Positions 5,597-63,956 of a stretch of DNA of 64,000 bases are shown here, in pieces. The stretch spans positions 4,526,001 to 4,590,000 of the forward strand of contig OZ281495.1 of assembly GCA_965637545.1 (NCBI GenBank). Direction: 5' to 3'. Source of the stretch: Phallusia mammillata. Lineage: Eukaryota. The number at the start of each line of letters is the position of its first letter. Position 1 is the stretch's first letter. The notes beneath the pieces are model-generated. The model ran no database searches, was not told the DNA's origin, and saw nothing but the letters and a program-made list of their open reading frames with translations. Position numbers and translations under genes: made by a program.

Positions 5597-8500
5597 TTAC
5601 TGGTCATACACTTCATAGGTTGTGTCTGTTGGTCCCTCTCTGTCATTATCTGTGCATGACAAATTAACTACTTTTTAACAGGTATTTCGGTTGAATATTG
5701 CAACTCAGCACTAACCATTTGAAGAGCGAAAGTCAGCAGTAGAATGGTCAACCTTCATTTCTTCGAAAAATAAAAAAAAAGTTTAATGAGTATACGGAAA
5801 ACATTATGGATATTTGTGTATTGACAACGAAAGAAATGCTACACCAACCTCAATTTCGATTCGCACTATTTGATTGTCTTCTTTAAAGATCTTAACACTT
5901 TCTCCACTTACCCGTCATGAGGAAAACATTCCTAGGCAGAAGAATTAATAACAGTCCAAACAATTCTATTAAAGCAATAGCACCCACGACACTAACAGCA
6001 ATAATAAGTGCTTGGTTTTCATTTCCATCACATATTTCGGATTCCATAATAATGGTAAACATCACAACAAGATCAGTAAATCCCTCAATTGGAGATTTAA
6101 TACGTAACTGGTAAGTTTCAACAGCTGCAAATGTCTTAAAAAGGTATATCAGTTGCGAACAATGATAATTAGAAAAAAAAAACTTACCTCAATTACAAAA
6201 ACAAACGTTTGGTTTGTGCTATCGTTGCGGTCAGCTGTTAAAGAACAACCACGACAAACCACAATTTCATCTACAAAAATGGCAATAAACAATAAGCACA
6301 CTTACATTACGGTGCTTGAATTTTGAATAAATGTTACCGTCTTTGGTCAACGTGTATTGAAATGAAGGGGGGTTGGAAGTAAACCTTACAAAACAACTTC
6401 CATTGACCACCTCATCCGATTGACAAGTTGTGTGACTGTTGATTTTTTCAGGTGAATCTGTCAAATACTTACATTTTAGTAATATTATTCAAATGCATTG
6501 AGATAAATAAATTGTAAATTTCATTAAAAAAGTATATTTTATTGAAAGTTACAGTACATGTTTAGCACCACCGACTTACATGTAACGTTTAAAAAGTATG
6601 TGCTTGTAAAATTTCCAAAAGCATCGCTTGTTAGGCAAATATAGTTTCCAAGGTCTTTTTTGGTCACATTATTCAAATTTAAAACGTTATTAAATTTGTC
6701 TATACCCCGCGTCTGGTCAGAAATTTGCCACTGAAATTTTGTGTCGAGTTCAATTGAATAGTCGATCGAGCAACTTAATGAGACATTTTCTCCGGCTTTT
6801 GTGGGTGTGTTGTTCACAACAAGCCCAGTAATGTAGGGTGCCCCTGAACAAAAACCAATTAATAATTTAACAAATCTACAAACAAAACATGAAACTCAAT
6901 ACTAAAACCTCCGGAACGTTTGTGGCAAACGTCATAAAAACTTACTAACGGTAACAACTGTGACATTAAGTTGCGAAACATCGCTACCAGCAATGTTACT
7001 TGAATTGCATGAAACTGATGCAGATTCTCCAAAACTGTGAGACAAAACACAAGAACTCTTGTTATGAATTATCTTTCCGATTTGAAATTTACAAATAGCA
7101 GGTGGATTTGCTTCTTTCAAACAGTTTAATGTCACTGTTTGTTCACCATCAAGAAAAACACCAAATTCATTTTCAATCGATAAATTACTAGATGTAATAT
7201 ATATCTTATTATGAATAGGTGGATCTGCAATAAATGTTGGTTGTTTTAGTTGTTTATGTTTCATTACGCATGAAAGCCAAAACCTACAAAAGACGTCAAG
7301 AAAAATCGTGCTCTGTAACATGTCGAATTTGTCTTCTGTCTGACATGTGTAGTTCCTTGTGTCAAACTTTTCTCAAGAATTGCTACTGTTCTTTTCTTTT
7401 TTCCCATTGAAAAGCCAATAACAGTTCGCAGGAGGATTTGCTTCATTTAAGCAATAAAATGTGACAATCTGTTCAGAGTTTAAAAGAATCACTTCACCCG
7501 ATGTTATTAGATTTGGTGATGCAAGATATGAGAGTTGTACATTATGTGGAGGATCTGTATAGCGTAAAGCATACATATTAAACTATGTAAATCTGTAGCA
7601 CAAATCTTACTTACACTGTTCATTCAGAATTGGAACGTTTGATTTTCCAAGTGTGTCGTCAAACTCCGTGTATGATGCGACATTCCTGTGCTTGAATGTT
7701 GGAGTAAACGGTACTCCTAGAGTCTATACAAATGTTTAAAAAATATCAAAACGCTATATTTCTAAACCTTCCGAAAAACGACTATACCAACGTTAAATAA
7801 ACATCACTAATATACACACTCGATTCCTGTCATCTTAAACCTCCTGGAATCAAACACCGTTAAACTAATAAAGCGACTGATCAAAAAACGAAACATCATA
7901 AACTTGAACAGTTTTTCCAATTATTGTATATATTGAGTATAACTTGCCTTGGAAACATTGTTATGGAGAATTGTACCAAAGTAATATCTAGAATTTGACC
8001 CATTTGGATATTGATTTTGATATTGACACTTAAGTAGTATGGTGCGATTTTCTGGTTTGGTATATGATGAACCAACAGTTCTATTGATTGAGACACTTGC
8101 AGTTGGAGCTGTATGTTTGTGTGGTTAATTGATTGCGTTCAGTAATAAAAGAAGCAGCAAAATAAGAACACTGCTACAATCAATATGTATTGAGCTAGCA
8201 TTTACAATATCTGGATTGTGGTTACAAACTGCAAAACGCGCTGCAGATACAGTGTTTCCAAAAATGCAACAAACCAACCAATCTTACCCGACCAATATTC
8301 CACTATATTTTCAACATCCCATTGAGCCGTTGACAAACACTTTGTGTTAGTGTTAGTGGCTGGGTTTCCATCGATAGTGAACAAACTTCCTTCGCTTGAA
8401 CAAGTAAACTCTCCTTGTGTGTTATAGAAACCATTTGGGGCCAACACAGATACATTATGATCCAACGTTCGTTGACAATCTAAAACAACCAATGATAAAT

Positions 8501-13436: not shown

Positions 13437-16400
13437 TTATTGGTCATACACTTCATAGGTTGTTTCTGTTGGTCCCTCTCTGTCATTATCTGTGCATGAC
13501 AAATTAACTACTTTTTAACAGGTATTTCGGTTGAATATTGCAACTCAGCACTAACCATTTGAAGAGCGAAAGTCAGCAGTAGAATGGTCAACCTTCATTT
13601 CTTCTTCGAAAATAAAAAAAAAGTTTAATGAGTATACGGGAAACATTATGCCTTTTTATGCATTGACAACGAAAAAAATGATACACCAACCTAAATTTCG
13701 ATTCGCACTATTTGATTGTCTTCTTTGAGGACTTAGGTTTGTATCTGCGATAATGAGTTTAATCAAAACACGGTTTTCAAAGATCTTAACACAGTCTCCA
13801 CTTACCTACCTTGAGGAAAACATTCCTAGGCAGAAGAATCAATAACAGTCCAAATAATTCGATTAAAGCAATAGCACCGACGACACTAACAGCAATAATA
13901 AGTGCTTGGTTTTTATTTCCACCACATATTTCGGATTCCATAATAATGGTAAACATCACAACAAGATCAGTAAATCCCTCAATTGGAGATTTAATACGTA
14001 ACTGGTAAGTTTCAACAGCTGCAAATGTCTTAAAAAGGTATATCAGTTGCGAACAATGATAATTAGAAAAAAAAAACTTACCTCAATTACAAAAACAAAC
14101 GTTTGGTTTGTGCTATCGTTGCGGTCAGCTGTTAAAGAACAACCACGACAAACCACAATTTCATCTACAAAAAAGGCAATAAACAATAAGCACACTTACA
14201 TTACGGTGCTTGAATTTTGAATAAATGTTACCATCTTTGTCCAAACAACTTGACCACCTCATCCGATTGACAAGTTGTCTGACTGTTGATTTTTTCAGGT
14301 GAATCTGTCAAATACTTACATTTTAGTAATATTATTCAAATGCAGTGAGATAAATAAATTGTAAATTTCATTAAAAAAGTATATTTTATTGAAAGTTACA
14401 GTACATGTTTAGCACCACCGACTTACATGTGACGTTTAAAAAGTATGTGCTTGTAAAATTTCCAAAAGCATCGCTTGTTAGGCAAATATAGTTTCCAAGG
14501 TCTTTTTTGGTCACATTATTCAAATTTAAAACGTTATTAAATTTGTCTATACCCCGCGTCTGGTCAGAAATTTGCCACTGAAATTTTGTGTCGAGTTCAA
14601 TTGAATAGTCGATCGAGCAACTTAATGAGACATTTTCTCCGGCTTTTGTGGGTGTGTTGTTCACAACAAGCCCAGTAATGTAGGGTGCCCCTGAACAAAA
14701 ACCAATTAATAATTTAACAAATCTACAAACAAAACATGAAACTCAATACTAAAACCTCCGGAACGTTTATGGCAAACGTCATAAAAACTTACTAACGGTA
14801 ACAACTGTGACATTAAGTTGCGAAACATCGCTACCAGCAATGTTACTTGAATTGCATGAAACTGATGCAGATTCTCCAAAACTGTGAGACAAAACACAAG
14901 AACTCTTGTTATGAATTATCTTTCCGATTTGAAATTTACAAATAGCAGGTGGATTTGCTTCTTTCAAACAGTTTAATGTCACTGTTTGTTCACCATCAAG
15001 AAAAACACCAAATTCATTTTCAATCGATAAATTACTAGATGTAATATATATCTTATTATGAATAGGTGGATCTGCAATAAATGTTGGTTGTTTTAGTTGT
15101 TTATGTTTCATTACGCATGAAAGCCAAAACCTACAAAAGACGTCAAGAAAAATCGTGCTCTGTAACATGTCGAATTTGTCTTCTGTCTGACATGTGTAGT
15201 TCCTTGTGTCAAACTTTTCTCAAGAATTGCTACTGTTCTTTTCTTTTTTCCCATTGAAAAGCCAATAACAGTTCGCAGGAGGATTTGCTTCATTTAAGCA
15301 ATAAAATGTGACAATCTGTTCAGAGTTTAAAAGAATCACTTCACCCGATGTTATTAGATTTGTTGATGCAAGATATGAGAGTTGTACATTATGTGGAGGA
15401 TCTGTATAGCGTAAAGCATACATATTAAACTATGTAAATCTGTAGCACAAATCTTACTTACACTGTTCATTCAGAATTGGAACGTTTGATTTTCCAAGTG
15501 TGTCGTCAAACTCCGTGTATGATGCGACATTCCTGTGCTTGAATGTTGGAGTAAACGGTACTCCTAGAGTCTATACAAATGTTTAAAAAATATCAAAACG
15601 CTATATTTCTAAACCTTCCGAAAAACGACTATACCAACGTTAAATAAACATCACTAATATACACACTCGATTCCTGTCATCTTAAACCTCCTGGAATCAA
15701 ACACCGTTAAACTAATAAAGCGACTGATCAAAAAACGAAACACCATAAACTTGAACAGTTTTTCCAATTATTGTATATATTGAGTATAACTTGCCTTGGA
15801 AACATTGTTATGGAGAATTGTACCAAAGTAATATCTAGAATTTGACCCATTTGGATATTGATTTTGATATTGACACTTAAGTAGTATGGTGCGATTTTCT
15901 GGTTTGGTATATGATGAACCAACAGTTCTATTGATTGAGACACTTGCAGTTGGAGCTGTATGTTTGTGTGGTTAATTGATTGCGTTCAGTAATAAAAGAA
16001 GCAGCAAAATAAGAACACTGCTACAATCAATATGTATTGAGCTAGCATTTACAATATCTGGATTGTGGTTACAAACAGCAAAACGCGCTGCAGATACAGT
16101 GTTTCCAAAAATGCAACAAACCAACCAATCTTACCCGACCAATATTCCACTATATTTTCAACATCCCATTGAGCCGTTGACAAACACTTTGTGTTAGTGT
16201 TAGTGGCTGGGTTTCCATCGATAGTGAACAAACTTCCTTCGCTTGAACAAGTAAACTCTCCTTGTGTGTTATAGAAACCATTTGGGGCCAACATAGATAC
16301 ATTATGATCCAACGTTCGTTGACAATCTAAAACAACCAATGATAAATGAAGTTACAGTGAAGCAAATACCATCTTGTCGTAGTTTTGAAACTAACTGTTG

Positions 16401-21232: not shown

Positions 21233-24200
21233 TTATTGGTCATACACTTCATAGGTTGTGTCTGTTGGTCCCTCTCTGTCATTATCTGTGCATGACAAAT
21301 TAACTACTTTTAACAGGTATTTCGGTTGAAATATTGCAACTCAGCACTAACCATTTGAAGAGCTAAAGTCAGCAGTAGAATGGTCAACCTTCATTTCTTC
21401 GAAAAATAAAAAAACAGTTTAATGAGTATACGGAAAACATTATGGTTATTTGTGTATTGACAACGAAAGAAATGCTACACCAACCTAAATTTCGATTCGC
21501 ACTATTTGATTGTCTTCTTTGAGGACTTACTTTTGTGTCTGCGATAATGAGTTTAATCAAAACAGTTTTCAAAGATCTTAACACAGTCTCCACTTACCCG
21601 TCTTGAGGAAAACATTCCTAGGCAGAAGAATCAATAACAGTCCAAATAATTCGATTAAAGCAATAGCACCCACGACACTAACAGCAATAATAAGTGCTTG
21701 GTTTTTATTTCCACCACATATTTCGGATTCCATTATAATGGTAAACATCACAACAAGATCAGTAAATCCCTCAATTGGAGATTTAATACTTAATTGGTAA
21801 GTTTCAATAGCTGCCAATGTCTTAAAAAATATTTCGGTTGCAAACAATGATAATTGAGAAAAAAAAACTTACCTCAATTACAAAAACAAATGTTTGGTTC
21901 GTGCTATCGTTGCGGTCAGCTGTTAAAGAACAACCACGACAAACCACAATTTCATCTACAAAAAAGGCAATAAACAATAAGAACACTTACATTACGGTGC
22001 TTGAATTTTGAATAAATGTTACCGTCTTTGGTCAACATATATTGAAATGAAGGGGGGTTGGAAGTAAACCTTACAAAACAACTTCCATTGACCACCTCAT
22101 CCGATTGACAAGTTGTGTGACTGTTGATTTTTTCAGGTGAATCTGTAAAGTACTTACGTTTAAGTTATATTATTCAAATACATTGAGTTAATAAATTCTA
22201 AATTTCATTAAAAAAGTGCATTTAATTGAAAGTTGCAGTAACTGTTTAGCACCACCGACTTACATGTGACGTTTAAAAAGTATGTGCTTCTAAAATTTCC
22301 AAAAGCATCGCTTGTGTGGCAAATATAGTTTCCAAGGTCTTTTTTGGTCAAATTATTCAAATTTAAAGCGTTATTAAATTTGTCCATATCCCGCGTCGGG
22401 TCAGGAATTTGCCACTGAAATTTTGTGTCGAGTTCAATTGAATAGTCGATCGAGCAACTTAATGAGACATTTTCTCCGGCTTTTGTGGGTGTGTTGTTCA
22501 CAACAGGCCCAGTAATGTAGGGTGCCCCTGAACAAAAACCAATTAATAATTTAACAAATCTACAAACAAAACATGAAACTCAATATTAAAACCTCCGGAA
22601 CGTTTATTGCAAACGTCATAAAAACTTACTAACGGTAACAACTGTGACATTAAGTTGCGAAACATCGCTACCAGCAATGTTACTTGAATTGCATGAAACT
22701 GATGCTGATTCTGTAAACTTGTGAGACAAAACACAAGAACTCTCATTATGGATATTATTCCCTATTTGAAATTCACAACTGGCAGGTGGATTTGATTGTC
22801 TTGAACAGTTGAATGTCACTGTTTGTTCACCATCGAGAAAAACACCGAATTCATTTTCAACCGATAAATTACTGGATGTGATATATATCTCATTATGAAT
22901 CGGTGGATCTGCAACAAATGTTGTTTTAGTTTATTATGTGTTTTTTTATGCATGAAAGTCAAAACCTACAAAAGACATCAAGGAAAATCGTGATCTGCAA
23001 AGTGTCGAATTTGTCTACTGTCTGACATGTGTAGTTCCCTGTGTCAAATTTTGAAACGTTGTTTATGTTAAGAACTGGTTTGTTTAAATCTAACCCATGC
23101 ACATTTGTTGTCACATTCCAATGGAACGTTGTATTCAGCTCGTATTGATATTCAACATTGCAATTCAGTATAACATTATCTCCTTGTATAATTGTGTCAC
23201 CTCCAGAATTATCAATATTTACATATCCTATAAAAAAATCCTTGCAAATATTAACATAAATTCAACTTACATAAACAACTCAAATAAATATTTCGTACTG
23301 TTTTCCACGACAAGTAATTCAATCACAGTGGACGTGGCATTTCCTAAACTATTTTCCATAAAACAAGAAATGTTGCTTGAAGACGAAATGACTTCATTAA
23401 TTTGGCAAGAATTGCCACTGTTCTCTTCTTTTTTTCCATTGTGAAGCAAATAACAGTTTGCAGGTGGATTTGCATCATTTGAACAATAGAATGTAACATT
23501 TTGTGCAGAGTTTAAGAGAAACTCTTTGTCCGAACTTATGAAATAGTCTGATAGCATAATTCCCAAATTCGGTTCATATGGAGGATCTGTATACGGGGAA
23601 CAATGCATTTGATGTGTTAAACTAGTTTAATGTTTATTACTTACACTGTACATCCAAAACCGTAACTTGAGATTTGCCCAGTGTGTTATTGTATTTTGTG
23701 TACGGCGTAACAGCTTGGCACGAAATTTTAAAATTGTTATTCTCGCGTGTTGGGGTGAATTGCTTTGTTGTGTTCTGTAAAACCGTTATTATTGCTTTGT
23801 TTTTGAATTTATTTAAAAACTGTTTCAAAAGTTTTTTTTAATCTAAAGAAGTACCTGCCTAGCTTTAAAACCAAACCGCAAACTGAAACAAATAGCCAAT
23901 AATCCGCTGGTAATTATCTTAGCGTCTTGTTAATGGTTACCTTTAAACTTTCCTCCAAAAATGTGCCGAAATAATAGTTTGAACTCAATCCGATTGGATA
24001 AACATCTTCGTATTGGCACTTAGGCAGTAAAGTAGTGTTTTCTGTTGTGGTATATGATAAACCAACCGATCCATTGATGGAAAGTTTCACAATTGGAGCT
24101 GTACAAAAATTGTAATTTAGAAAAAAAGTATTACCAAAGTTTGTTTAAAATCACTGAAAATCTACATAACGTTGGAAAGACGGCATTAATGACACAAACT

Positions 24201-38874: not shown

Positions 38875-41800
38875 TCAGATGTTTGTTGAATCTGTTAAAT
38901 GAAAACGTTATCTGTAATACTAACAAATACACAAAAGCAGTAACTTACCTTTTGCTACAAGATTCGGTTTCTTCTTTATTGGAGGTTTAGATTTTTTTAT
39001 GCTGGGACCAGCTTCTGTTTTACCTAAAGTTGAACGAACATTTTATTCGCAGTAAGCGTAATGTCATACAAGACTACGAAAACCAGTCTGTGTAACAGGA
39101 TGATTCTGTTTGAGTAATCCAGAAACTGACGATGCCCTAATAGGCGAAATTAATATTTCTGTTTTGTAAATAAACGACGTCACTAATGTTGAAGGTTTTC
39201 CGCCGTATTTTATACACATTTTAAGTGTAACTTGCTTAACCAACATAAACTATGTTTTCTCACCGGTTGGTTTTGCCTTGTTTACTTGAGCATAAACATC
39301 TCCACTGGATGTGGGGCAGCTGCTATATTCTGAAATTTACGTGACGCTGCTTTAAGTGCAAAAAAACAAATTTTATAGCGATAACAAGTAGAGGTTATAA
39401 AGAAAAATTGAAAATTCATATTTTTTACTTAAGTTCGAAAAACATATAGTTTGTACTCAATGCAATGTATGTTACCATTCATACTTGCTTAAAGTATTTG
39501 TTAACTTTTGCAACAGACCTTTCATGGGGAAATCCTGTGGCGTAATTACGTGCAAAGGAATCCCAGTTGGTTGGTGAAAGTTGTACAAGGGATTCAGTTT
39601 TTCGTCTTTTTCAACTAAAAAGCATAATGAAAAGTGTAAAAGTAATTGACAATACAAACATTTAAACTAAAAAAAATGTTGTTAGAACGTAAATAGAGAC
39701 AATTATATTTTTGGATGAACTATTTTACTTTTTGTCTTTTTTGATTTGTCCACTTCAGCATAAACTTCATTTCCTGATGTTGCTGAACGTGATTCGTATA
39801 GTGAATTGACAGGTTCTTCTTTAACTAATCATAACGACAGAATTTACTGTTACGCACTTTAAGTTTTACATTAAACCTAACTATAGTCAATCGTTTCAAA
39901 AAAAGTGTTTTAATCATTAAGATTATTTTTTTTGTAAAAATTTCGTACATATTACAGATGATGCCATCAGGTGTTTTGTTTGACCAATTCGTGCTCAATT
40001 TCGTCCGACCAAACCAGGCTTTTTGAAATAAGTGTTGTGCGGTCCTCTAAGACGCTTTGAATTTAAAAGAAGTGTGATGCGATTTTTGTACAAAGCTAGG
40101 GACAATACTAGTGTTTTGATAAGCAATCAAGTAAAGTTCATTTATTCCAAAAAAAGGTTTCAGTAGTTGCATATTTAACTTGCCTTTCTGCTTTTTCTTG
40201 ATGTCAACTTGTGCGTACGTATCTCCAATCGTCACAGAGCGTTGTGGTGCATCTATTTGTAATCAAACTCAATCAACGGAGCTTGTTTACTTAACAGAAT
40301 AAAGCTTTGACCAACGAAGCACACCGAAAAACTTTTTAACAATTAAGTCCAATGGACCTTAACTCGTAAGTTTAGTCGATGTTGCACAAAAGTTTGTAAG
40401 AACTATAACTTAAGTGCTCGTTGTAAAGTAACTTATATTACAGATTACTTGCTTAATAGTCAACTTACCGTTAACAACTTTGCAATCTGAGCGTGGTGGG
40501 TTTATTCGTTCCTCGTTTTTAGAGCGTTGCACTTGTGTAAAGAACGTGTGTTAATATGCAAGGTATTGCAAAGAAAAAAATATGTCAAAAGTATTTTCTC
40601 TTACCAACAGCGTATGCATCAGTCGCTTCATCTGGGTCGCCACTGGTATCGTAAAGTGGATTGATTCTTTCTTCTTTTACACTACCTAAAACAAAAAAGC
40701 CAAATGAGTTTGGGGCTGGTTTGCTACAAAGAATGAGTATATATGCCATTTATTCGAATTGAATGAGTATCAGCTTATTCATCGTATGGCCCTGCACGTA
40801 AATATTATATTAACGAAGCAAAGCAAATTTGCTTACTAGCTCAAACATAAGTTTCAATTTTTTGTACACTACTTTGCAAATGCCCACCTAAGTCCGTATT
40901 TTCGTGATCAGATTGTCTTTTATCACTACCGGAATTTTCACCTTGGAATGTAAATAAATTTAGAAACAAAGATCAACTGGTACAGTATGTCAAAATAAAC
41001 TTACTGGATTTATTCAAATAATTTCTTCTCAAGAAAAACACCGCCACCAACACAATAACAATAAAAGCAATTGCACCCACTATACTTCCAGCGATTATGG
41101 CTGTTTGATTTCCGTTTCCATAAGGTACGTTGCTTTCCCTGGATATTGCAAACTCAACAACTAGATCATTAAATTCTTCCATTGGTGATTTAATTCTTAA
41201 CTGATATGTTTCTGTTTCAGAGAAAATCTAAAAAATGCAAACTTGCAGATATCTAAATACAGAAAATAACAACACACAGAATTTACCTCTATCATCAATA
41301 AAAATGTTTGCTTTGTGCTGTCCTTATTATCAGTTGTCAGGGAACAATTAAGGCAAAGCACGATACGACCTCAAAAAATGTCAATAAATATAAACCAAGC
41401 GAATTACAAAGAAAATAAAACTTGACTGACCATTATTTGTCAAAGTGTATTGAAACGAAGGTGGATTGGAGGTAAACGTAACAAAGCAATTTCCATTTAC
41501 CACTTCATCTGATTGACAGTTCGCGTTACTACTTATTTCCTGTGGAGAATCTGAAAAGTATTTTCACACAACATTTTTACGGGTCAAAAATTAATTAAAT
41601 AAAAGCAACTCACAAGTCACATTTAAAAAATGTCGACTGGTGTAATTTCCAAAAACATCACTTGTTTTGCAAACATAGTTTCCCAAATCCAATCTGGTCA
41701 AATTAGTCAAAATCAAAACATCATTTAATTTATCTATCACTCTCGTCTTATCAGGAATTTGCCACTGATACTTTGTATCGAGTTCAACAGAATAATTAAC

Positions 41801-44800
41801 GAAGCAAATTAGAGCAACAGTTTCGCCGGCTTTTATGGGTGCCTGGTTTACATCAGGTTCTGCAACTTGCGATGATCCTGCAAAATAGTTTGATGCTTTA
41901 CATGCTAAATCAAAATGAAAGCTACAGTAATTCACACTTACTATCTTTAACAACTGTAACATTAAGTTGTGAAAAGCCGCTGCCAGCAATATTACTTGCA
42001 TTGCATGAAACCAATACTGTATCTGTAAAGATGTGAGACAATACACAAGAATTTCCATATTGAATAAATGCGTCAATTTTAAATTCGCAACTGGGAGGGG
42101 GATTTGCGTCTCTTGAACAGTTTAGTGTAGCTGTCTGTTCACCATCAAGTAAAACACCATATTCATTTACAACTGATGAATTACTTGACGTCACAACAAT
42201 CTTGTCAAGAATTGGGGAATCTAAAAATATTTCCAAAAATAGTGGTTTGCCAAGTAAAATCTTTCATAACAAATAGAAACTGATGTAAGTGGTGTTTTAT
42301 AGAAGCAGTCTTCAGTTTGGTATATATAGTACAAGCTTTGAAAATTACAAGCTTTTTAAAACACTAACAAGCTTTGAAATAATAATAGTCTTTATAACTG
42401 AATTATCAGATAATAGTTTAAACAATTTTTTGTTGTTACATTCCATTGGAAGAATATATTGATTTCACAACGTTTAGTAATGTATTTGTCAAGATGCGCA
42501 AAATATTTGTTTTTATAATAACCGAACGCAAAATATATTATATTAAACTTACACTGCACGTTGAGCAAAGTTTCCGGTGAACGACCAAGTGCGGTATTGT
42601 ATTCCGTGTATGGAGTCACAGCTTGGCATGATACATTGAGATTGTTGTCTTCGCGTGTTGTATTAAAATAGACAGAAATAGCCTGAGGACAACAGTCAAA
42701 CAAGTAATTGGAAACGTTTGTAGAAGTGAACATCGTATAGCAACAATACGTTTGTTATTGAAAAGATAAACTTTGTTTGTGGTCTTTTTTTCGCAAACAA
42801 TGCTTTTATTGATATTTACTTGATGTATAAGTTCCTTTATTATTTTTATTATTTTTATCACAGTAGAGTGCCGATTTAGTTTTGCACAATTCAATGTAAC
42901 TCAACCATATAGTATTTTAAGTTATTTGTTTGCATTTTTTGCAAACCTGGGTTTGTTTGCAGCCAGTCTAGCACTTACTTTTGAAACATTGCGATAAACG
43001 TTTGTTCCTTTATAATAAACTGTATTTAATCCAACTGGGTATTCATCAGTGTACTGGCAATCGAATGTTAATATTTGATTTTCGTTGACCGTAAGTGTAG
43101 TGCTTGAATTTTCGTTGATTAACAGAGTTGGGCATGGCGCTTTAAAAACAAGATTAAATAGTATTCGTCCGTTACGCGTCAATGTTTCAATAAAGCCTAC
43201 CTAACCAACATTCAACTGTACTTTCCGACTCCCATTGGGCAGTTGACAAACATACTGTATTATTGCCAGGGAACGGTGTTAATTTGTTTGCGAACAATCT
43301 TCCATTGTTTAAGCAATTAAATTGTCCTTCTGTGTCGAAATATCCATTCTTAGAACTAACCGACACATTGAAATTGACCACTTTTTTGCATTCTTAAAAA
43401 AAAACGTTAATTTTTACCCCCTCGGTAATTGGTATGATAGTATTGATATGTTTTGTCCGTTTTTCATTTCACTTTGTCTGAACATAAATTATATGGTCTT
43501 AAAGAGATTCATACTTACGATGTGTTTAATTATGATTCATTCAGATTTTATCATTTTTACTGCTTTTTTGTAATGCAGATTGGTGTCGTTTTGTGTTTTC
43601 CTAAAATCAGTGACTTCAGCCAGTCGCATGTGTGTTTGGGAAAGGTTTCACCGCCAAATTTAACCAGCAAAATATTTATGCAAGTTTACGTACAATTTAT
43701 TAGATTGCAACAAGATTACAAGGGTGCTAGCAATTTGCCAGGTGTATGAGAGCAGAACAAATGTTTTCCAGACAGACCTGCAATTTTTGCTTAACATTTG
43801 TGCCCGGAATCAATATTGAGTAGCTTCCTAATTTCCAGAATTTTTGCGTCCAGTGGACTACAGCGCTTTTTAAAGTACACGAAACTGCTGTCACAAGGTG
43901 ATTTAAACAAAGGGGCAAACATCTCATCACGTTATTACTCAATACCAAGAGTTTGGTTTCTTCTGTTTCGGTAAATATGGATGTGTAAAGAGGTTTACGT
44001 GCTTCCCTTGTCTCTGCGATCATACACGGGATATGCAGACCAAACAACTCATCAACATGATTTTATGGCTATTTGGAAAACTTTTCATTGATGCTACGAA
44101 ACCTCATAGGAAGGCCAATCGCCAAAAAAATATGTCCAGTCGAACAGAATTCACCAAAACATATTTTAAAATATTTTTTCTACCTGAAAAGAAACAACTC
44201 TGTGATCATACAAGAAACTTTATCTCTATAGTAGTATTTGCATTTTACAAACAAATAGCGTTTGGGTAGTTCATAGCTATGCTATAAAACACAATATGAC
44301 GCCAATTTAGTTTCGCTTAACGTGTCTTCTGAAACTTTTGACAACTTGGATCACTGAGATACGGTAACCCAACGATACAGTATAAACTTTAATATTATAA
44401 TAAATGCATTGGTATTACTTACCTCGCGTGGTAATATTTTTGTACATTTTCGTTGCATTACCTTCTGCAGCCAGCAACGCTTGTCCAGCTTTTTCTGAAT
44501 CAGCAACTGTTAATGAAATGCTGCTGTTGTTCAAAGAAAAATTTGTAGGTAGAGGAACGCCAAACGTTGTATGAATGCAAGATTCATTCCATTGTAATGT
44601 TCCACGAAATTCTGTGAATTGAAATTTGCCATCATTGTACGATGAATTGCCCTTGTTCCAAGTAAAACTAATGGTGTCATTTATGTTGTTGTTCCAAATT
44701 TCCCATTTCAAGTTAGGCAGACGTTGGCCATCAGAGTAACATTTAGAGTACCAGTACATTGTTCCATTGTACTTTTCCGCCCAGATTGTTTGGTGTGGTT

Positions 44801-45116
44801 GTAGTTTGCTGTCTGTAAACATGTATAAAATATACGATAATTGGCAGCAACAAATGATACATTTTCTAAAATTTAGCGATATTAAGCAACAAAAGTGAAA
44901 ACTCTTTACAAAACGACGCAAACTGCAATAAAATACGGTGTTTAGAAACTTAGTATCAAACGGCCATATCTTAAAAACTTCTCTCAATTTTTAAGTTTCC
45001 AATTAAGACCGGAAAAATGTCAAAAAGTAAATACCATCTGCAGCATCCAGCGTAAACAACCAGAGTAGCACACAAATTTTGTACACCATACTTCCCGAAC
45101 GTGTATGAGCTGCCAT
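38875..45116 (-). CDS. Receptor paralog E, intact (~807 aa): SP - Ig D1 - CCP - four Ig-like domains - uncharged TM - long tyrosine-motif tail
   Basis: 17 exons: 45116-45035, 44812-44423, 43392-43201, 43139-42979, 42682-42553, 42220-41942, 41877-41614, 41550-41431, 41369-41287, 41227-41005, 40685-40605, 40252-40184 (GC donor), 39824-39729, 39614-39519, 39329-39264, 39023-38949, 38891-38875. Exon lengths 192/130/279/264/120/83/223 match D exactly. TM is AIIAGSIVGAIAFIVIVLVAVFFL. The 39519 donor and the last exon are tentative. Confidence 0.85.
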
Positions 45117-47100: not shown

Positions 47101-49883
47101 CTATTCTTCATCAAAATATTACTTGCATCTCAACACTACTGCCACTGATCAGGAGACAACCATTTATGTGTTGGATGCCTTGCGACTACAATTGGCAAAA
47201 AAGTCCTTTACAGTTGAAACCAGTAGGTGTTTTTTCCAACAGTATTTAAATTTGTTTAATACATTTATACGCTAGATTTCTATAATGATTTTTCATGTAA
47301 TGATTTTCAGTCAAAAATAGACCATACGTTCATGTAAAAACATGACTTTGTGACACATCTTATGCCATTCATAAAACAAAAGAATCTAAATCTGTATAAT
47401 ACTGAGAATTATGTACCTAATTACTTCTAAATTTATTTAGACTGTTTCATTTGTTCAAGTGAAGTGAATTGTTCGACATTAACATGTGGCCTTAACTGCA
47501 CAACCCAACTCAATTGCGTTGGAAATTACACTGGTAGTAAAACAGGAGTTTGTCAAGATGATTGTTCTTTTTCAGAAACGGGTACTTGTTGCAAAGGTAA
47601 TCAATAATACATACGGTAGCAAAGACCTGTAAAAGGACACTATTTGACAAGAAGCATTTTCTTGATATTTTTTGTCCACCAGGCTGCTCTTTACCGACAT
47701 CTATTGGTTGTGGCTGTGAACAGGAGTGCAATATTAGTTCAGCCAAGAATTCTTTGCACTGTGGTGAAAGCATCCAAGTGACGTGTACAAACAAGTGCGA
47801 GGCGGGGACTACCGAAGTTCAATGTAGCTCAGAAGGCAACTTGACCGCAAAATTGTGCAATCCAAGTAAGTTTTGATTTTTTCTGGCCAGAAATGCCATT
47901 TTGCCAACTACCGACCAGTTTTGACTTTCGAAAGACTTTTTAGTTGATTTATGTGTCAAAACGTAATTGTCTTTTTTTGTATTTTGATTTCTTTTAACTA
48001 CTTTTACACAGTACAATAAGAGAATAGGGAAGATAAACAGCCTGAATTGCATATAATTGATTGCAAAATACGTCAAACGATACCTTCATCGAAGAACATT
48101 TTATTCCTAACGTGCGTCGAATACTTGACCTACTTTACATTGATATTGATATTTTTGCTTGCTATTCAATTTCGGCAATTTTTCAACACCAATCATGTAA
48201 AAACATAAGCAAACATACCCACCATGCAATGTTGCGTACCAACATAAGGAGTTTTTACAAATAGATCCAGATTTTTAGACATAATCACTCGGGCTATTTT
48301 CAGTAAAATGCTTGGTGCCGGACTCAATAAATTGCGGTTGTCAAGAAGATTGTAGCTTTGCGACATCAAGCGGAGATGAAGTTATTTTGAATACAACTAT
48401 CTCGGTGCCCTGTCCACAAGGTTGCACTGGAACTGCCGTTGCACAATGTGGAGATGATGGAAAGTTTGTGGTTACGCAAACTTGTGCTGACGGTATGGTT
48501 TGGTTGTAGAGCCAAAAAAGCACGACAGCTTCCCAAAACCAACGTTTTGCCCAGTGATTTTTTGTTTTGTTTTTTATAACGGTTTGCATTGGGGTGTGCG
48601 AAAGGTGGTTCACTTCCAATATCATATATATTTTTTTTTATTTGAGAAAAGTTGGTAATATATCTTCATTTTGTTAATTTCTGTTTCGTTTCAGTGGAGT
48701 GTGTAAGGCCTGAGTCAATTTTTTGTGGTTGCGAAAGTGAAGAGTGTAGTTTCCCTGAAGGTGACAACGTTCAATTCGGCCAAACTGTTCAACTTGACTG
48801 TCCTGTCGGTTGCAATGGAACCGCTATAGCACGCTGTTTGACAGATGGAAACTTTGAAACAACGGATTGTCCAGGAGGTAATCATGTTGCATGCAGGGAT
48901 ACGTTAAAAAATATTATGTGTGAAATTTAAAAATATGGTGTAAAAATTTAAATGTATGGTGTACAAAGCAAACGGTATTGGGACTATTGTGGTTGGGAAA
49001 AGGTTAGTTATTAAAAATAACCTATTATAATACATAGTCGTGAATTGTCCCCAAAGCTGCAAATATCTAAGGTCGTTAAGCTTCCAATCAGAATCGAGCA
49101 CATATTTGTAACATCTCGAGTTAGTAACTCTACCCATCGTTTAAGCCAGGCATCAGCAAACAGAATTTAAATGCTACACGGTGTCTTCAGTGAACCATTC
49201 CCATTTATATATTCATGACATATATCTGTGGTCATTTCCATTAACGACCACAAAATCGCATAATGTTTGCACTGATTGAGTATGGGAAAACCATACCCGC
49301 GCCTTTATCACAATATTAAGTCCAAATACTGCAGTTAGAACATGGAAGAAGCAGCAGCTAGTTACGAAGGGACGATATACTAAAACAAATTTGTACCGGC
49401 GGAACATTTTTTTAGACAGCTCAACAATGTGATTCGACCTATAAACGTTACTGCATACAACGTCCAACATTCACAGTTTCACAGTACATTTTATTTTAGC
49501 AACATTACGTAACGCCTGTTTGTACTACTTAATTTTGAGCAACTTCCCGCAATATCACAGTACACAGATTGTTTTTTTTCCAATTTGTTTCACAACAAGG
49601 TAGACTTCTCATTGTTTCAAGTAAATCTATATTGTTTTTTTCCACATTTGTCTTTATTTCTATTGCCACGCAACTTTATTAATGACCTTAAACTTATAAC
49701 GGCAATGTCTTTGAAAAGAGTATAGACAGTGACAGCGGTTTATTTGCTTTTCTTGTTTTAGGGGACGATAAAGGAAAATCTTTGTCTGCCGGAGCAGTAG
49801 CTGGAATAGTAGTTGGATGTGTATTAGGGTGTTGTATGATTGCGGGGGCGATTTATTGTTGCTGCTGTAGAGGAAAAACATAA
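47101..49883 (+). CDS. Gene F: type I membrane protein with four Cys-rich CCP-like modules, TM and a YCCCCRGKT tail; 5' exons (probably from ~46530) unresolved
   Basis: Exons 47101-47222, 47441-47596 (10 Cys), 47683-47865 (9 Cys), 48304-48492 (8 Cys), 48695-48877 (8 Cys) and 49762-49883 (AGAVAGIVVGCVLGCCMIAGAIYCCCCRGKT*). The module exons are symmetric phase 1-1 with GT/AG. Candidate upstream exons at 46715-46794 and 46945-46987 do not join in phase. Confidence 0.75.
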
Positions 49884-63436: not shown

Positions 63437-63956
63437 TTAATTAATGCTTACATCGCTTACATGGAGGTCACGTGTTGGAGAATTTTTGCCTGAAACAAAC
63501 AAATCAATTCGGTGTATGGATGTCAAACAAACGAACCTACTGTTAGAATTTAAGTTTAGCGTCTTACGTGTTGGAGGTTTAGGTGCCATAGATTTTTTGC
63601 CGGAATTTGTCGACTGGTCTTCTGCAAAAAATCTTGATAAGTTGCGGTTAAAATACACAATCAAGCCAAAAACTCATTTAGGAAAAAATACATATCAAGC
63701 TTACATCTTGTTTGTTCTTATGTTGGAAAGTCGATTCATGTATTAAAATAATTTGTTCAGTCGTTTTTAGATTTAAATAGCCCGATACAAACAGCACAAA
63801 ACTGAATATAACCTTTACCATTATGTTCATAATCCAGGTTTGAAGTTTGATAAGAAGCTCCCCCGTATAAGGGATTAATTCTCTCTTCCTTTTCACCTGC
63901 TGGGCGCACCTCCACATCGCTTGCAACATAAATTGGATTCAAACGTTCCTCTTTAA
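63437..63956 (-). CDS. Receptor member I: last cytoplasmic exons of another E-type paralog; the rest lies beyond the right edge
   Basis: Exons 63956-63819 (KEERLNPIY...GEKEERINPLYGGASYQTSNLDYEHN), 63621-63541 (KKSMAPKPPTRK) and 63489-63437 (stop). All are phase 1. KEERINPLY is identical to the first tail exon of E. Confidence 0.75.

What the first reader, a model, noticed from the sequence alone, without database searches (positions are those of the whole stretch)
38875..40685. E tail is assembled from duplicated phase-1 mini-exons carrying NxxY and [DE]xYAxV motifs
The tail exons give KEERINPLY..DAYAV, GDTYAQVDIKKK, KEEPVNSLY..NEVYAEVDKSKK, KDEKLNPLY, GDVYAQVNK and KKSKPPIKKKP, and tentatively end DSTNI (class I PDZ-like T-x-I). 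Established: NPxY binds PTB domains and drives endocytosis, and YxxV binds SH2 domains. The three YAxV sites all have an acidic residue at -2, so they are not canonical ITIMs. All the exons are symmetric, so alternative splicing could tune motif number without frameshift. This looks like a lineage-specific signalling code.
Basis: partly seen in the sequence, partly recalled or inferred. Interest (0 to 1): 0.72.

Follow-up and report, generated by a model that had tools for sequence, protein, structure and literature searches.

The report
Repeat-exon tyrosine tail of sea-squirt receptor
The inner tail of this sea-squirt immunoglobulin-type surface receptor is built from small in-frame exons that repeat a two-tyrosine docking unit (NPxY plus an acidic YAxV). 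The same one-exon unit is kept in a neighbouring gene and in another organism's DNA, so it is a real, apparently undescribed signalling or sorting module, but its expression and partners are untested.

Summary
On the minus strand, after the membrane-anchor exon (41211-41005), nine short exons (40941 to 38875) have AG/GT borders (one GC donor), lengths divisible by three and phase 1.

The repeats are not chance. A profile built only from four unit exons of another organism (metagenome contigs L001-L006) picks e3, e5, e4 and e6 of this tail, plus a paralogue's exon at 63956-63819, out of 3,982 six-frame fragments.

The ancestral unit is one ~36-residue exon: basic/acidic lead, NPxY, 11-15 residues, [DE]xYAxV, lysine run. 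Gene E holds a partly decayed array: 3 NxxY and 3 YAxV sites, one YAV, one Y-to-H loss, and one possible extra exon.

No ITIM, ITSM, ITAM or hemITAM is present. One site matches the 'core-2' motif published in 2025 for Botryllus fester co-receptors, whose layout gene E resembles; that paper never mentions NPxY.

The scan had already noted the same tail type in paralogues 115-235 kb away in this genome.

The parts
41005..41211 (-). Exon e1. It encodes the juxtamembrane segment, the single TM helix (AIIAGSIVGAIAFIVIVLVAVFFL, no charged residue) and the start of the tail (RRNYLNKS).
   Evidence: It is 53-57% identical to the TM exons of the three D-type copies. Acceptor cag, donor gtaagt.
40888..40941 (-). 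Exon e2, 54 nt, phase 1-1 (ENSGSDKRQSDHENTDL).
   Evidence: It is homologous to a 54-nt exon of the D-type copy at 13744-13691, which has the same length and donor position (p 0.004).
40605..40685 (-). Exon e3, 81 nt. This is unit 1: KEERINPLY, 12 residues, then DAYAV. The second motif is truncated by the donor.
   Evidence: HMM from the other organism gives E 7.6e-10, and the match runs past the donor into the read-through GKRK.
40469..40531 (-). Candidate extra exon e3b, 63 nt, phase 1-1 (QRSKNEERINPPRSDCKVVN). It is a decayed NPxY half. If included, the e3/e3b junction would read DAYAVV.
Evidence: The donor gtaagt is strong. The HMM hit is not significant (E 8.4).
40184..40252 (-). Exon e4, 69 nt. 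It is a second-half-only unit (GDTYAQVDIKKKQK) with a GC donor.
   Evidence: HMM E 0.019 on model positions 21-36. No phase-compatible GT donor exists.
39729..39824 (-). Exon e5, 96 nt. It is a complete unit in one exon (KEEPVNSLY, 11 residues, EVYAEVDKSKKTK).
   Evidence: HMM E 3.8e-6 over model positions 4-36.
39519..39614 (-). Exon e6, 96 nt. It is a unit with an intact NPLY and a decayed second half (PLHVIT in place of xxYAxV).
   Evidence: HMM E 0.022 on the first half only.
39264..39329 (-). Exon e7, 66 nt. It is a second-half-only unit (SGDVYAQVNKAKPT). DVYAQV is an exact match to the Botryllus core-2 motif [A/D]VYxxV.
   Evidence: DNA similarity to e5 has z 7.6. HMM is marginal (E 1.5).
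38949..39023 (-). Exon e8, 75 nt. It encodes a basic proline/lysine stretch (KSKPPIKKKPNLVAK).
   Evidence: There is weak similarity to the paralogue exon at 63621-63541 (KSMAPKPPTRKT; E 0.17).
38875..38891 (-). Predicted last coding piece, e9 (DSTNI plus stop). This is tentative.
   Evidence: ATTAAA lies about 200 nt downstream at 38678-38673. There is no support from paralogue, homologue or RNA.
63819..63956 (-). Exon F1 of a paralogous tail; that gene runs off the window end. It is 138 nt, phase 1-1, and holds two NPxY halves (KEERLNPIY and KEERINPLY). The second Tyr is kept at +12 (LDYEHN), but the YAxV is lost.
   Evidence: HMM E 4.3e-9.
41614..41877 (-). Membrane-proximal Ig-domain exon of gene E, given as context (264 nt, phase 1-1).
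   Evidence: Pfam ig (PF00047) E 2.8e-6. Borders read.
45035..45089 (-). Exon 1 of gene E, given as context. It holds the start codon and a signal-peptide-like MVYKICVLLWLFTLDAADG.
   Evidence: by reading. The donor is G|gtattt, phase 1.

Best explanation
Gene E (about 45.09 to 38.87 kb, minus strand) is an intact-looking type I immunoglobulin-superfamily receptor gene of a sea squirt. Its predicted 192-residue cytoplasmic tail is a partly decayed tandem array of one ancestral exon-sized unit.

The unit is about 32-40 residues long, always phase 1-1, and reads: K/E-rich lead, [ILV]-N-P-x-Y, 11-15 linker residues, [DE]-x-Y-A-x-V, lysine-rich end. Because the exon is symmetric, it could be duplicated, split, truncated or skipped without breaking the frame.

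In E the array now offers:
- 3 NxxY sites (2 NPLY, 1 NSLY);
- 3 acidic YAxV sites;
- relics: YAV in e3, LHVIT in e6, NPPR in e3b.

Shown here: the sequence features, their phases, their homology to one another, their homology to a paralogue, and their homology to clean one-exon units in another organism.

Inferred: the tail is a multivalent tyrosine docking scaffold.
- The NPxY halves would recruit PTB-domain adaptors of the CED-6/GULP, Dab, Numb, Shc or Dok type.
- The acidic YAxV halves, once phosphorylated by a Src- or Syk-type kinase, would recruit SH2 proteins.
- They are not expected to bind SHP-type phosphatases in the classical ITIM mode, because -2 is acidic.

Context supports this. 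Three neighbouring D-type copies share the juxtamembrane/TM exon but carry a glutamate in the TM helix and a short tail. E therefore looks like the long-tailed, self-signalling member of a paired-receptor set.
For: - Exon borders, phases and translations.
- Motif enrichment: 5 hits against 0.03 expected, and 3 against 0.47 expected.
- DNA-level similarity of the motif cores between exons: z 4.5-9.2.
- Unit alignments.
- Metagenome loci L001-L006 hold a gene with a TM exon followed by five AG/GT, phase 1-1 exons of 108-120 nt. Four of them are complete NPLY..[DE]xY[AS]xV..K-rich units.
- These loci have no blastn match to the window, so conservation is at the protein-unit level only.
- The motif residues are invariant among the six haplotype-like contigs, while linker residues vary.
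- An HMM from those foreign units finds exactly the predicted exons in the window.
- e2 is supported by a same-length homologous exon in the D-type copy.
- Gene E has a signal-peptide exon, an Ig exon with a Pfam hit and no internal stops in the model.
- Published Botryllus FcoR tails carry tyrosine motifs including core-2 [A/D]VYxxV (PMC12582321).
- The CED-1 tail combines FQNPLY with YASL and YADI, and binds the CED-6 PTB domain (PMC11228867).
Against:
- No database protein matches the TM exon.
- The exhaustive search with the Ig exon gave only giant multi-Ig proteins at 37% identity or less.
- e4 needs a GC donor. e2 (gtgggc) and e6 (gtctgt) have weak donors.
- The last exon is 17 nt and unsupported.
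- Several units are decayed, which could mean relaxed constraint on this copy.
- Phase-compatible AG..GT segments are common in this AT-rich DNA.
- No binding, phosphorylation or localisation data exist.
- The organism behind L001-L006 is not identified. A very divergent paralogue of the same species cannot be formally excluded.
Confidence: 0.7

Rival explanations
1. The tail is mainly an endocytic or sorting tail, not a phosphotyrosine signalling tail. NPxY would be read by PTB-type clathrin adaptors. YAxV would be read, unphosphorylated, by the mu2 subunit of AP2 as a YxxPhi signal. Multiple copies would give fast constitutive internalisation or recycling, as in LDLR/LRP1, Yolkless or CED-1.
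For: - YAQV and YAEV fit YxxPhi, and NPLY fits NPxY.
- PMC11228867 documents that CED-1, with FQNPLY, YASL and YADI, depends on CED-6 and AP2/clathrin for correct surface display. It also documents that LRP1 and LDLR combine NPxY with YxxPhi.
- No SH3 (PxxP) or Grb2-type motif accompanies the units.
Against: - The aromatic residue at -5 of the classical [FY]xNPxY signal is missing; here R/K/P sits at -5 and I/V/L at -4.
- Strict conservation of D/E at -2/-3 and of Ala at +1 in both organisms is more than YxxPhi needs. It fits kinase and SH2 specificity better.
- The gene sits in a cluster of fast-evolving receptor copies with paired long and short tails, which is the usual setting of immune-type signalling receptors.
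- The two readings are not exclusive.
Confidence: 0.2
2. Only part of the predicted tail is used. The mature mRNA ends early through intron retention or an alternative polyadenylation site after e3, e4 or e5. The downstream 'exons' would then be relics of a formerly longer array, or gene E as a whole would be a decaying copy.
For: - Decayed units: YAV in e3, LHVIT in e6, NPPR in e3b.
- The e4 donor is GC, and e2 and e6 have weak donors.
- Read-through of the e3, e5 or e8 donors meets a stop within 6-10 codons; read-through of e4 meets one after about 40.
- In Botryllus FcoR3/4, the documented tail variants arise by intron retention with premature stops (PMC12582321).
- Two of the three neighbouring D-type copies were judged damaged by an earlier follow-up. 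I did not check this.
Against: - e5 and e7, which lie downstream, keep intact motifs, good acceptors and donors, and open frames.
- AG|GCAAGT is the standard GC-AG donor consensus (own knowledge).
- All 17-18 predicted exons of E are open from the signal peptide to the stop.
Confidence: 0.12
3. The pattern is a chance product of AT-rich, lysine- and glutamate-coding sequence and of the reader's free choice among many AG..GT segments.
For: 56 phase-compatible AG..GT candidates, at about 20 distinct places, exist in the 2.2-kb region.
Against: - Motif counts are far above shuffles.
- An HMM from another organism's exons hits precisely these segments, at E down to 7.6e-10, and no non-exon fragment of the 64 kb scores better than E 1.9.
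- Exons are richer in G+C than the introns, 0.386 against 0.315.
Confidence: 0.01

Closest known systems
Botryllus schlosseri fester co-receptors (FcoR), PNAS 2025, PMC12582321
   Same: - Both are type I IgSF receptors of an ascidian, laid out as signal peptide, N-terminal Ig-like domain, Sushi-like module, further Ig domains, one TM helix, and a tail of variable length with two or more tyrosine motifs.
- The genes lie in clusters of divergent copies.
- The 'core-2' motif [A/D]VYxxV is matched exactly by DVYAQV (e7) and within one residue by EVYAEV and DTYAQV.
- The Tyr-to-Tyr distance e4-e5 is 32 residues. The paper gives 29-33 for paired core-2 motifs, without saying how the distance is counted.
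- YAxV/L cores also occur in the FcoR3/4 motifs LAYAIV, VAYAIV and DDVYAIL.
   Different: - The paper never mentions NPxY (0 occurrences), or a repeated one-exon bipartite unit.
- It describes tail variants by intron retention, not by skipping of symmetric exons.
- It treats only Botryllus, naming Botrylloides once and no solitary ascidian.
- Homology of gene E to FcoR proteins could not be tested, because no FcoR sequences are reachable with these tools.
- The Sushi and N-terminal Ig assignments for E rest on reading only.
CED-1 / Draper / MEGF10-type engulfment receptor tails
   Same: One tail combines an NPxY (CED-1: FQNPLY) read by a PTB adaptor (CED-6/GULP) with YAxL/I-type YxxPhi motifs (YASL, YADI) (PMC11228867). 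This is the nearest known case of what gene E's tail may work like.
   Different: - The ectodomain is unrelated (EGF repeats, not Ig).
- The motifs are single, far apart and not arranged as a repeated exon unit.
- The Phe at -5 is present in CED-1 and absent here.
ITIM / ITSM tails of vertebrate inhibitory IgSF receptors (e.g. SLAM-family TIYAQV; own knowledge)
   Same: The Y-A-Q-V core and the Y..V spacing are shared. So are the long tyrosine-rich tail on an Ig receptor and the short-tailed relatives with a charged TM residue nearby, which is paired-receptor logic.
   Different: The defining -2 residue ([ILVS] for ITIM, T for ITSM) is D/E in all sites here and in the other organism. The tail is therefore not a member of either class.
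Integrin beta cytoplasmic tails (NPxY, 11 residues, NxxY)
   Same: Both have NPLY/NPIY followed by a second tyrosine 12 residues later (own knowledge for integrins). There is a weak, sub-threshold Pfam Integrin_b_cyt match of exon F1 (E 0.14).
   Different: The match is below threshold, the second motif differs (NxxY against [DE]xYAxV), the integrin tail has a single copy, and the ectodomain is unrelated. This is resemblance only.

Membership tests
FcoR family (Botryllus; PMC12582321) | Signal sequence, single TM, type I topology | tested here: met
   Exon 1 reads MVYKICVLLWLFTLDAADG. There is one hydrophobic 24-residue helix in e1 followed by RR. Both were judged by reading; no predictor was run.
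FcoR family (Botryllus; PMC12582321) | N-terminal Ig domain followed by a Sushi domain | tested here: inconclusive
   The exon at 43202-43390(-) has four Cys and a Trp in Sushi-like spacing, by eye. Pfam finds nothing for it or for the N-terminal exon. The single-sequence AlphaFold model has pLDDT 45 and was unusable.
FcoR family (Botryllus; PMC12582321) | Two further Ig domains before the TM | tested here: inconclusive
   One exon (41614-41877) hits Pfam ig at E 2.8e-6. The exon before it (41943-42221) gives no Pfam hit, though it has an Ig-like Cys pair by eye.
FcoR family (Botryllus; PMC12582321) | Tail longer than 60 aa with two or more tyrosine motifs (ITIM, hemITAM, core-1 YxxI/L/V or core-2 [A/D]VYxxV) | tested here: met
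   The tail model is 192 aa with three core-1 matches, one of which is also an exact core-2 match.
FcoR family (Botryllus; PMC12582321) | Sequence homology to Botryllus FcoR proteins; adjacency to and co-expression with a fester-family partner | not testable with these tools
   No FcoR sequences are held and the supplements are not available. The exhaustive search with the Ig exon returned only multi-Ig giants.
Core-2 pair (Botryllus FcoR) | [A/D]VYxxV in pairs 29-33 residues apart at the C-terminal end | tested here: inconclusive
   DVYAQV is an exact match. EVYAEV and DTYAQV each differ by one residue. Tyr-Tyr spacings are 32 and 55. In L003 the sites read DAYAEV, EPYAEV and DAYSTV, at spacings of 36-41.
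ITIM | [I/L/V/S]xYxx[I/L/V] | tested here: not met
   There is no match in the tail model with or without e3b. Position -2 is D or E at all YAxV sites.
ITSM | TxYxx[V/I] | tested here: not met
   No match. In DTYAQV the Thr sits at -1, not -2.
ITAM / hemITAM | YxxL/I, 6-12 residues, YxxL/I; or [DE][DE][DE]xYxxL | tested here: not met
   No match. Position +3 is Val, and only one or two acidic residues precede the Tyr.
NPxY PTB/endocytic signal | NPxY core, classically [F/Y]xNPxY | tested here: inconclusive
   The NPLY core is present twice, and NSLY once. The aromatic at -5 is absent: R, P or K sits at -5 and I, V or L at -4. Binding was not tested.
Class I PDZ ligand | [S/T]-x-hydrophobic at the free C-terminus | tested here: inconclusive
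   The model ends in ..STNI. This rests on an unverified 17-nt exon, and the paralogue F's predicted end (..DVSIN) does not fit.

The most novel reading that the evidence does not exclude
The bipartite one-exon unit (NPxY plus acidic YAxV plus Lys run) is an ascidian-wide signalling cassette, and the Botryllus 'dual core-2' motif is a two-copy remnant of it.
- It would couple a PTB adaptor and an SH2 effector on each repeat.
- Its copy number would be tuned by exon gain, exon decay and in-frame exon skipping.
- Gene E (long tail, neutral TM) and the D-type copies (TM glutamate, tail cut down to one relic unit) would form an inhibitory/activating-style receptor pair in a sea squirt, evolved independently of vertebrate paired receptors.
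Probability: 0.2. Interest if true: 0.7.

Novelty: new variant of a known kind. Interest (0 to 1): 0.45.

Why it matters
Tyrosine-motif tails are how immune-type Ig receptors decide between activation, inhibition and uptake. In tunicates, the closest relatives of vertebrates, the only described case is the Botryllus FcoR family (2025), whose 'core' motifs have no known function.

A conserved, exon-sized unit that always pairs an NPxY with an acidic YAxV gives those motifs a defined context. It also gives a testable partner hypothesis (PTB plus SH2) and a simple evolutionary mechanism for changing valency: symmetric phase-1 exons.

The unit is also a practical search handle. A 36-column profile can find such receptors in unannotated ascidian genomes.

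This particular gene is a partly decayed example, and the scan has already met cleaner copies nearby. The added value here is the independent cross-organism confirmation and the link to the published core-2 motif.

Tried and rejected
No splice junction was verified.
- Exhaustive protein search with the Ig exon 41615-41875(-): 858 hits, but the top 150 are giant multi-Ig proteins at 24-37% identity. There was no self or close hit, and none carries the tail motifs. The Ig exon was a poor choice of query for this single job.
- Word search with the TM exon: no candidates.
- Pfam on every tail exon and on the unit alignment, and PDB sequences with the unit profile: nothing, apart from a sub-threshold Integrin_b_cyt match (E 0.14), which I reject as evidence.
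- AlphaFold on the Sushi-like exon without an alignment: pLDDT 45. I did not send it to a fold search.
- Supplements of the two Botryllus papers are not held, so there was no FcoR sequence comparison.
- Exon against intron divergence among the L001-L006 haplotypes: rates are similar and the alignment ends are noisy. I do not use it as evidence of constraint beyond the invariance of the motif residues.
- My first ungapped-offset identity script (first part) used a bad scoring rule. Ignore it; only the base-composition part is used.
- The look-up of the foreign unit in the scan's notes by sequence was blank, which means little.
- The joined spliced protein was used only inside scripts, for translation and motif counts.
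Full report
**What is there**

The feature lies on the minus strand. After an exon that encodes a juxtamembrane segment, one uncharged TM helix and RRNYLNKS (e1, 41211-41005), I located nine further segments with AG acceptors and GT donors. Each has a length divisible by three and is read in phase 1:
- e2: 40941-40888
- e3: 40685-40605
- e4: 40252-40184
- e5: 39824-39729
- e6: 39614-39519
- e7: 39329-39264
- e8: 39023-38949
- e9: 38891-38875, which ends DSTNI-stop

- e4 has a GC donor (AAAG|gcaagt). No phase-compatible GT donor exists there.
- There is an additional in-frame phase-1 candidate exon, e3b (40531-40469), with a strong gtaagt donor. It encodes a decayed first half (KNEERINPPR).
- e6 contains a decayed second half (PLHVIT at the place of xxYAxV), and e3 ends in YAV, one residue short of the motif.

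**The gene**

Upstream exons are also phase 1. They comprise:
- a signal-peptide exon at 45089-45035;
- an odd N-terminal domain;
- a four-Cys, one-Trp Sushi-like exon (43390-43202, by eye);
- further Ig-like exons, of which 41877-41614 hits Pfam ig at E 2.8e-6.

All predicted exons are open. The tail model has 192 residues and 9 tyrosines. Earlier notes of this scan call the genome a sea squirt, and one names Phallusia mammillata. I did not check either.

**Is it more than chance?**

Phase compatibility alone is weak evidence. The same 2.2 kb holds 56 AG..GT open phase-1 candidates at about 20 places. The repeat is the real signal:
- [KE][DE]E..N..Y occurs five times in the six-frame translation of the window against 0.03 expected. 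All five are on the minus strand: three in this tail and two in a second tail at 63956-63819.
- [DE].YA.V occurs three times within 1 kb against 0.47 expected per window.
- The motif cores are also similar at DNA level (z 4.5-9.2). Only about 30 nt per exon align, so the duplications are old.
- Exons are G+C-richer than the introns, 0.386 against 0.315.

**Independent confirmation from other DNA**

I scanned JGI metagenome contigs with the first-half pattern taken from alignment A2. This returned six loci. They are 93-100% identical to each other, like haplotypes of one locus, and have no blastn match to the window.

In L003 a TM exon is followed by five AG/GT exons of 111, 111, 114, 120 and 108 nt, all phase 1-1. 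Four of them are complete units. Two examples are KEERVNPLY..EDAYAEVEKKTKKAK and KEEKVNPLY..EEPYAEVGNKKTNKK.

Only the first half was used to find these loci. The second half, its spacing and the repetition were seen afterwards, so they are independent observations. Among the six contigs the motif residues never vary, while linker residues do.

I then built an HMM from those four foreign units alone and searched all 3,982 stop-free six-frame fragments of the window:

| Segment | E-value |
|---|---|
| e3 | 7.6e-10 |
| F1 | 4.3e-9 |
| e5 | 3.8e-6 |
| e4 | 0.019 |
| e6 | 0.022 |
| e7 | 1.5 |
| best non-exon fragments | 1.9 and 2.4 |
| e3b | 8.4 |

The top six hits are the predicted exons. The e3 match runs past its donor into the read-through GKRK, which aligns with the foreign EKKTKK. 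The e3 donor therefore lies inside a former full unit.

The organism behind the contigs is unknown. A different ascidian is the simplest reading, because neither E nor F was found in the same collection. A very divergent paralogue of the same species cannot be excluded.

**Anatomy**

The ancestral module is one symmetric exon: K/E-rich lead, [ILV]NPxY, 11-15 residues, [DE]xYAxV, Lys run (alignment A3). The state of each E exon is:

| Exon | State |
|---|---|
| e3 | unit with truncated second half |
| e3b | relic first half; use unknown |
| e4 | second half only |
| e5 | full unit |
| e6 | unit whose second Tyr became His |
| e7 | second half only |
| e8 | basic Pro/Lys exon, weakly like one in paralogue F |
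| e9 | unsupported |

If e3b were included, the junction would create a fourth site, DAYAVV.

Paralogue F keeps two NPxY halves in one 138-nt exon and a second Tyr at +12, but has no YAxV.

The three D-type copies share e1 at 53-57% identity and a same-length e2. They carry a Glu in the TM helix and have a short tail ending ..TTYEVYDQ.

**Comparison with what is known**

None of the ITIM, ITSM, ITAM or hemITAM patterns matches the tail.

The closest published system is the Botryllus FcoR family (PMC12582321):
- The layout is the same: signal peptide, Ig, Sushi, two Ig domains, TM, tyrosine-motif tail.
- The paper defines a 'core-2' motif [A/D]VYxxV, found in pairs 29-33 residues apart. Its function is unknown. 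It is typical of the monomorphic FcoRs, including the partner of the activating receptor uncle fester.
- DVYAQV (e7) is an exact core-2 match. EVYAEV and DTYAQV each differ by one residue. The e4-e5 Tyr-Tyr distance is 32.
- The paper has no occurrence of NPxY. It discusses no solitary ascidian. It reports tail variants by intron retention, not by exon skipping.

The nearest functional analogue is the CED-1 tail: FQNPLY read by the CED-6 PTB domain, plus YASL and YADI as YxxPhi signals (PMC11228867).

A library search for NPxY together with tunicate terms found no paper that holds NPxY. Pfam and PDB hold nothing like the unit.

**Mechanism**

Most likely (inference), the tail is a multivalent docking scaffold:
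- PTB adaptors would sit on the NPxY halves.
- SH2 proteins would sit on the phosphorylated acidic YAxV halves.
- Valency would be set by how many units survive or are spliced in.

The main rival is that both halves act as clathrin sorting signals, with a PTB adaptor on NPxY and AP2 mu2 on YxxPhi. The two readings can coexist.

A further rival is that this copy is truncated in its mRNA or is decaying.

**Limits**

- The word search with the TM exon was blank.
- The joined protein was used only inside scripts and no search was made with it.

**Relation to the scan's earlier notes**

Notes s1-408634, s1-351753 and s1-382300 report the same tail type in paralogues 115-235 kb before this window. 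One follow-up states that it is conserved across ascidian orders and unpublished. My metagenome result agrees with conservation outside this gene, but I could not name the other organism.

**Verdict**

The feature is real at the sequence level. It is a partly decayed member of a conserved repeat-exon tyrosine tail on FcoR-like ascidian receptors. It is a new variant of a known kind, and its function and expression are untested.

Noticed in passing
window 13810-14010, 5928-6116, 21599-21802 (minus strand), with tail exons at 13744-13691, 13603-13556 and about 13491-13439: Three D-type copies share the juxtamembrane/TM exon of gene E at 53-57% identity. They have a Glu in the TM helix (..IALIELFGLL..) and a short tail ending ..TTYEVYDQ-stop. 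Their e2 is homologous to E's e2 and has the same length. The last exon weakly resembles a relic first-half unit (REGPTDTTYE against KEEPVNSLYE, p 0.04). Together with E this gives a long-tail/short-tail paired-receptor pattern.
   Followed up: partly
window 63541-63956 (minus strand): A second receptor gene (F) runs off the window end. Its tail has a 138-nt exon with two NPxY halves and no YAxV, then an 81-nt basic Pro-rich exon (KSMAPKPPTRKT) resembling e8, and a predicted end ..DVSIN.
   Followed up: partly
L003 1-7991 (JGI metagenome contig Ga0210059_1007728), together with L001, L002, L004, L005 and L006: Eukaryotic, intron-bearing receptor DNA with five repeat-unit tail exons sits in five different metagenome samples as 93-100% identical haplotype-like contigs. 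The host organism is unidentified. The contig end also carries GC-rich repeat-like stretches (about 6300-6380 and 7940-7991).
   Followed up: partly
window 48312-48930 (plus strand) and 49773-49856 (plus strand): A plus-strand gene with Cys-rich 'CGC' Sushi-like modules, followed by a TM-like segment, lies a few kb upstream of gene E's start on the opposite strand (divergent orientation). This recalls the small Sushi membrane genes that earlier notes saw between FcoR-like receptors.
   Followed up: no
window 40594-40605 (minus strand): Retention of the e3 intron would end the protein at ..DAYAVGKRKYF-stop after a single unit. This gives a ready-made short-tail isoform of the kind reported, through intron retention, for Botryllus FcoR3/4.
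   Followed up: no
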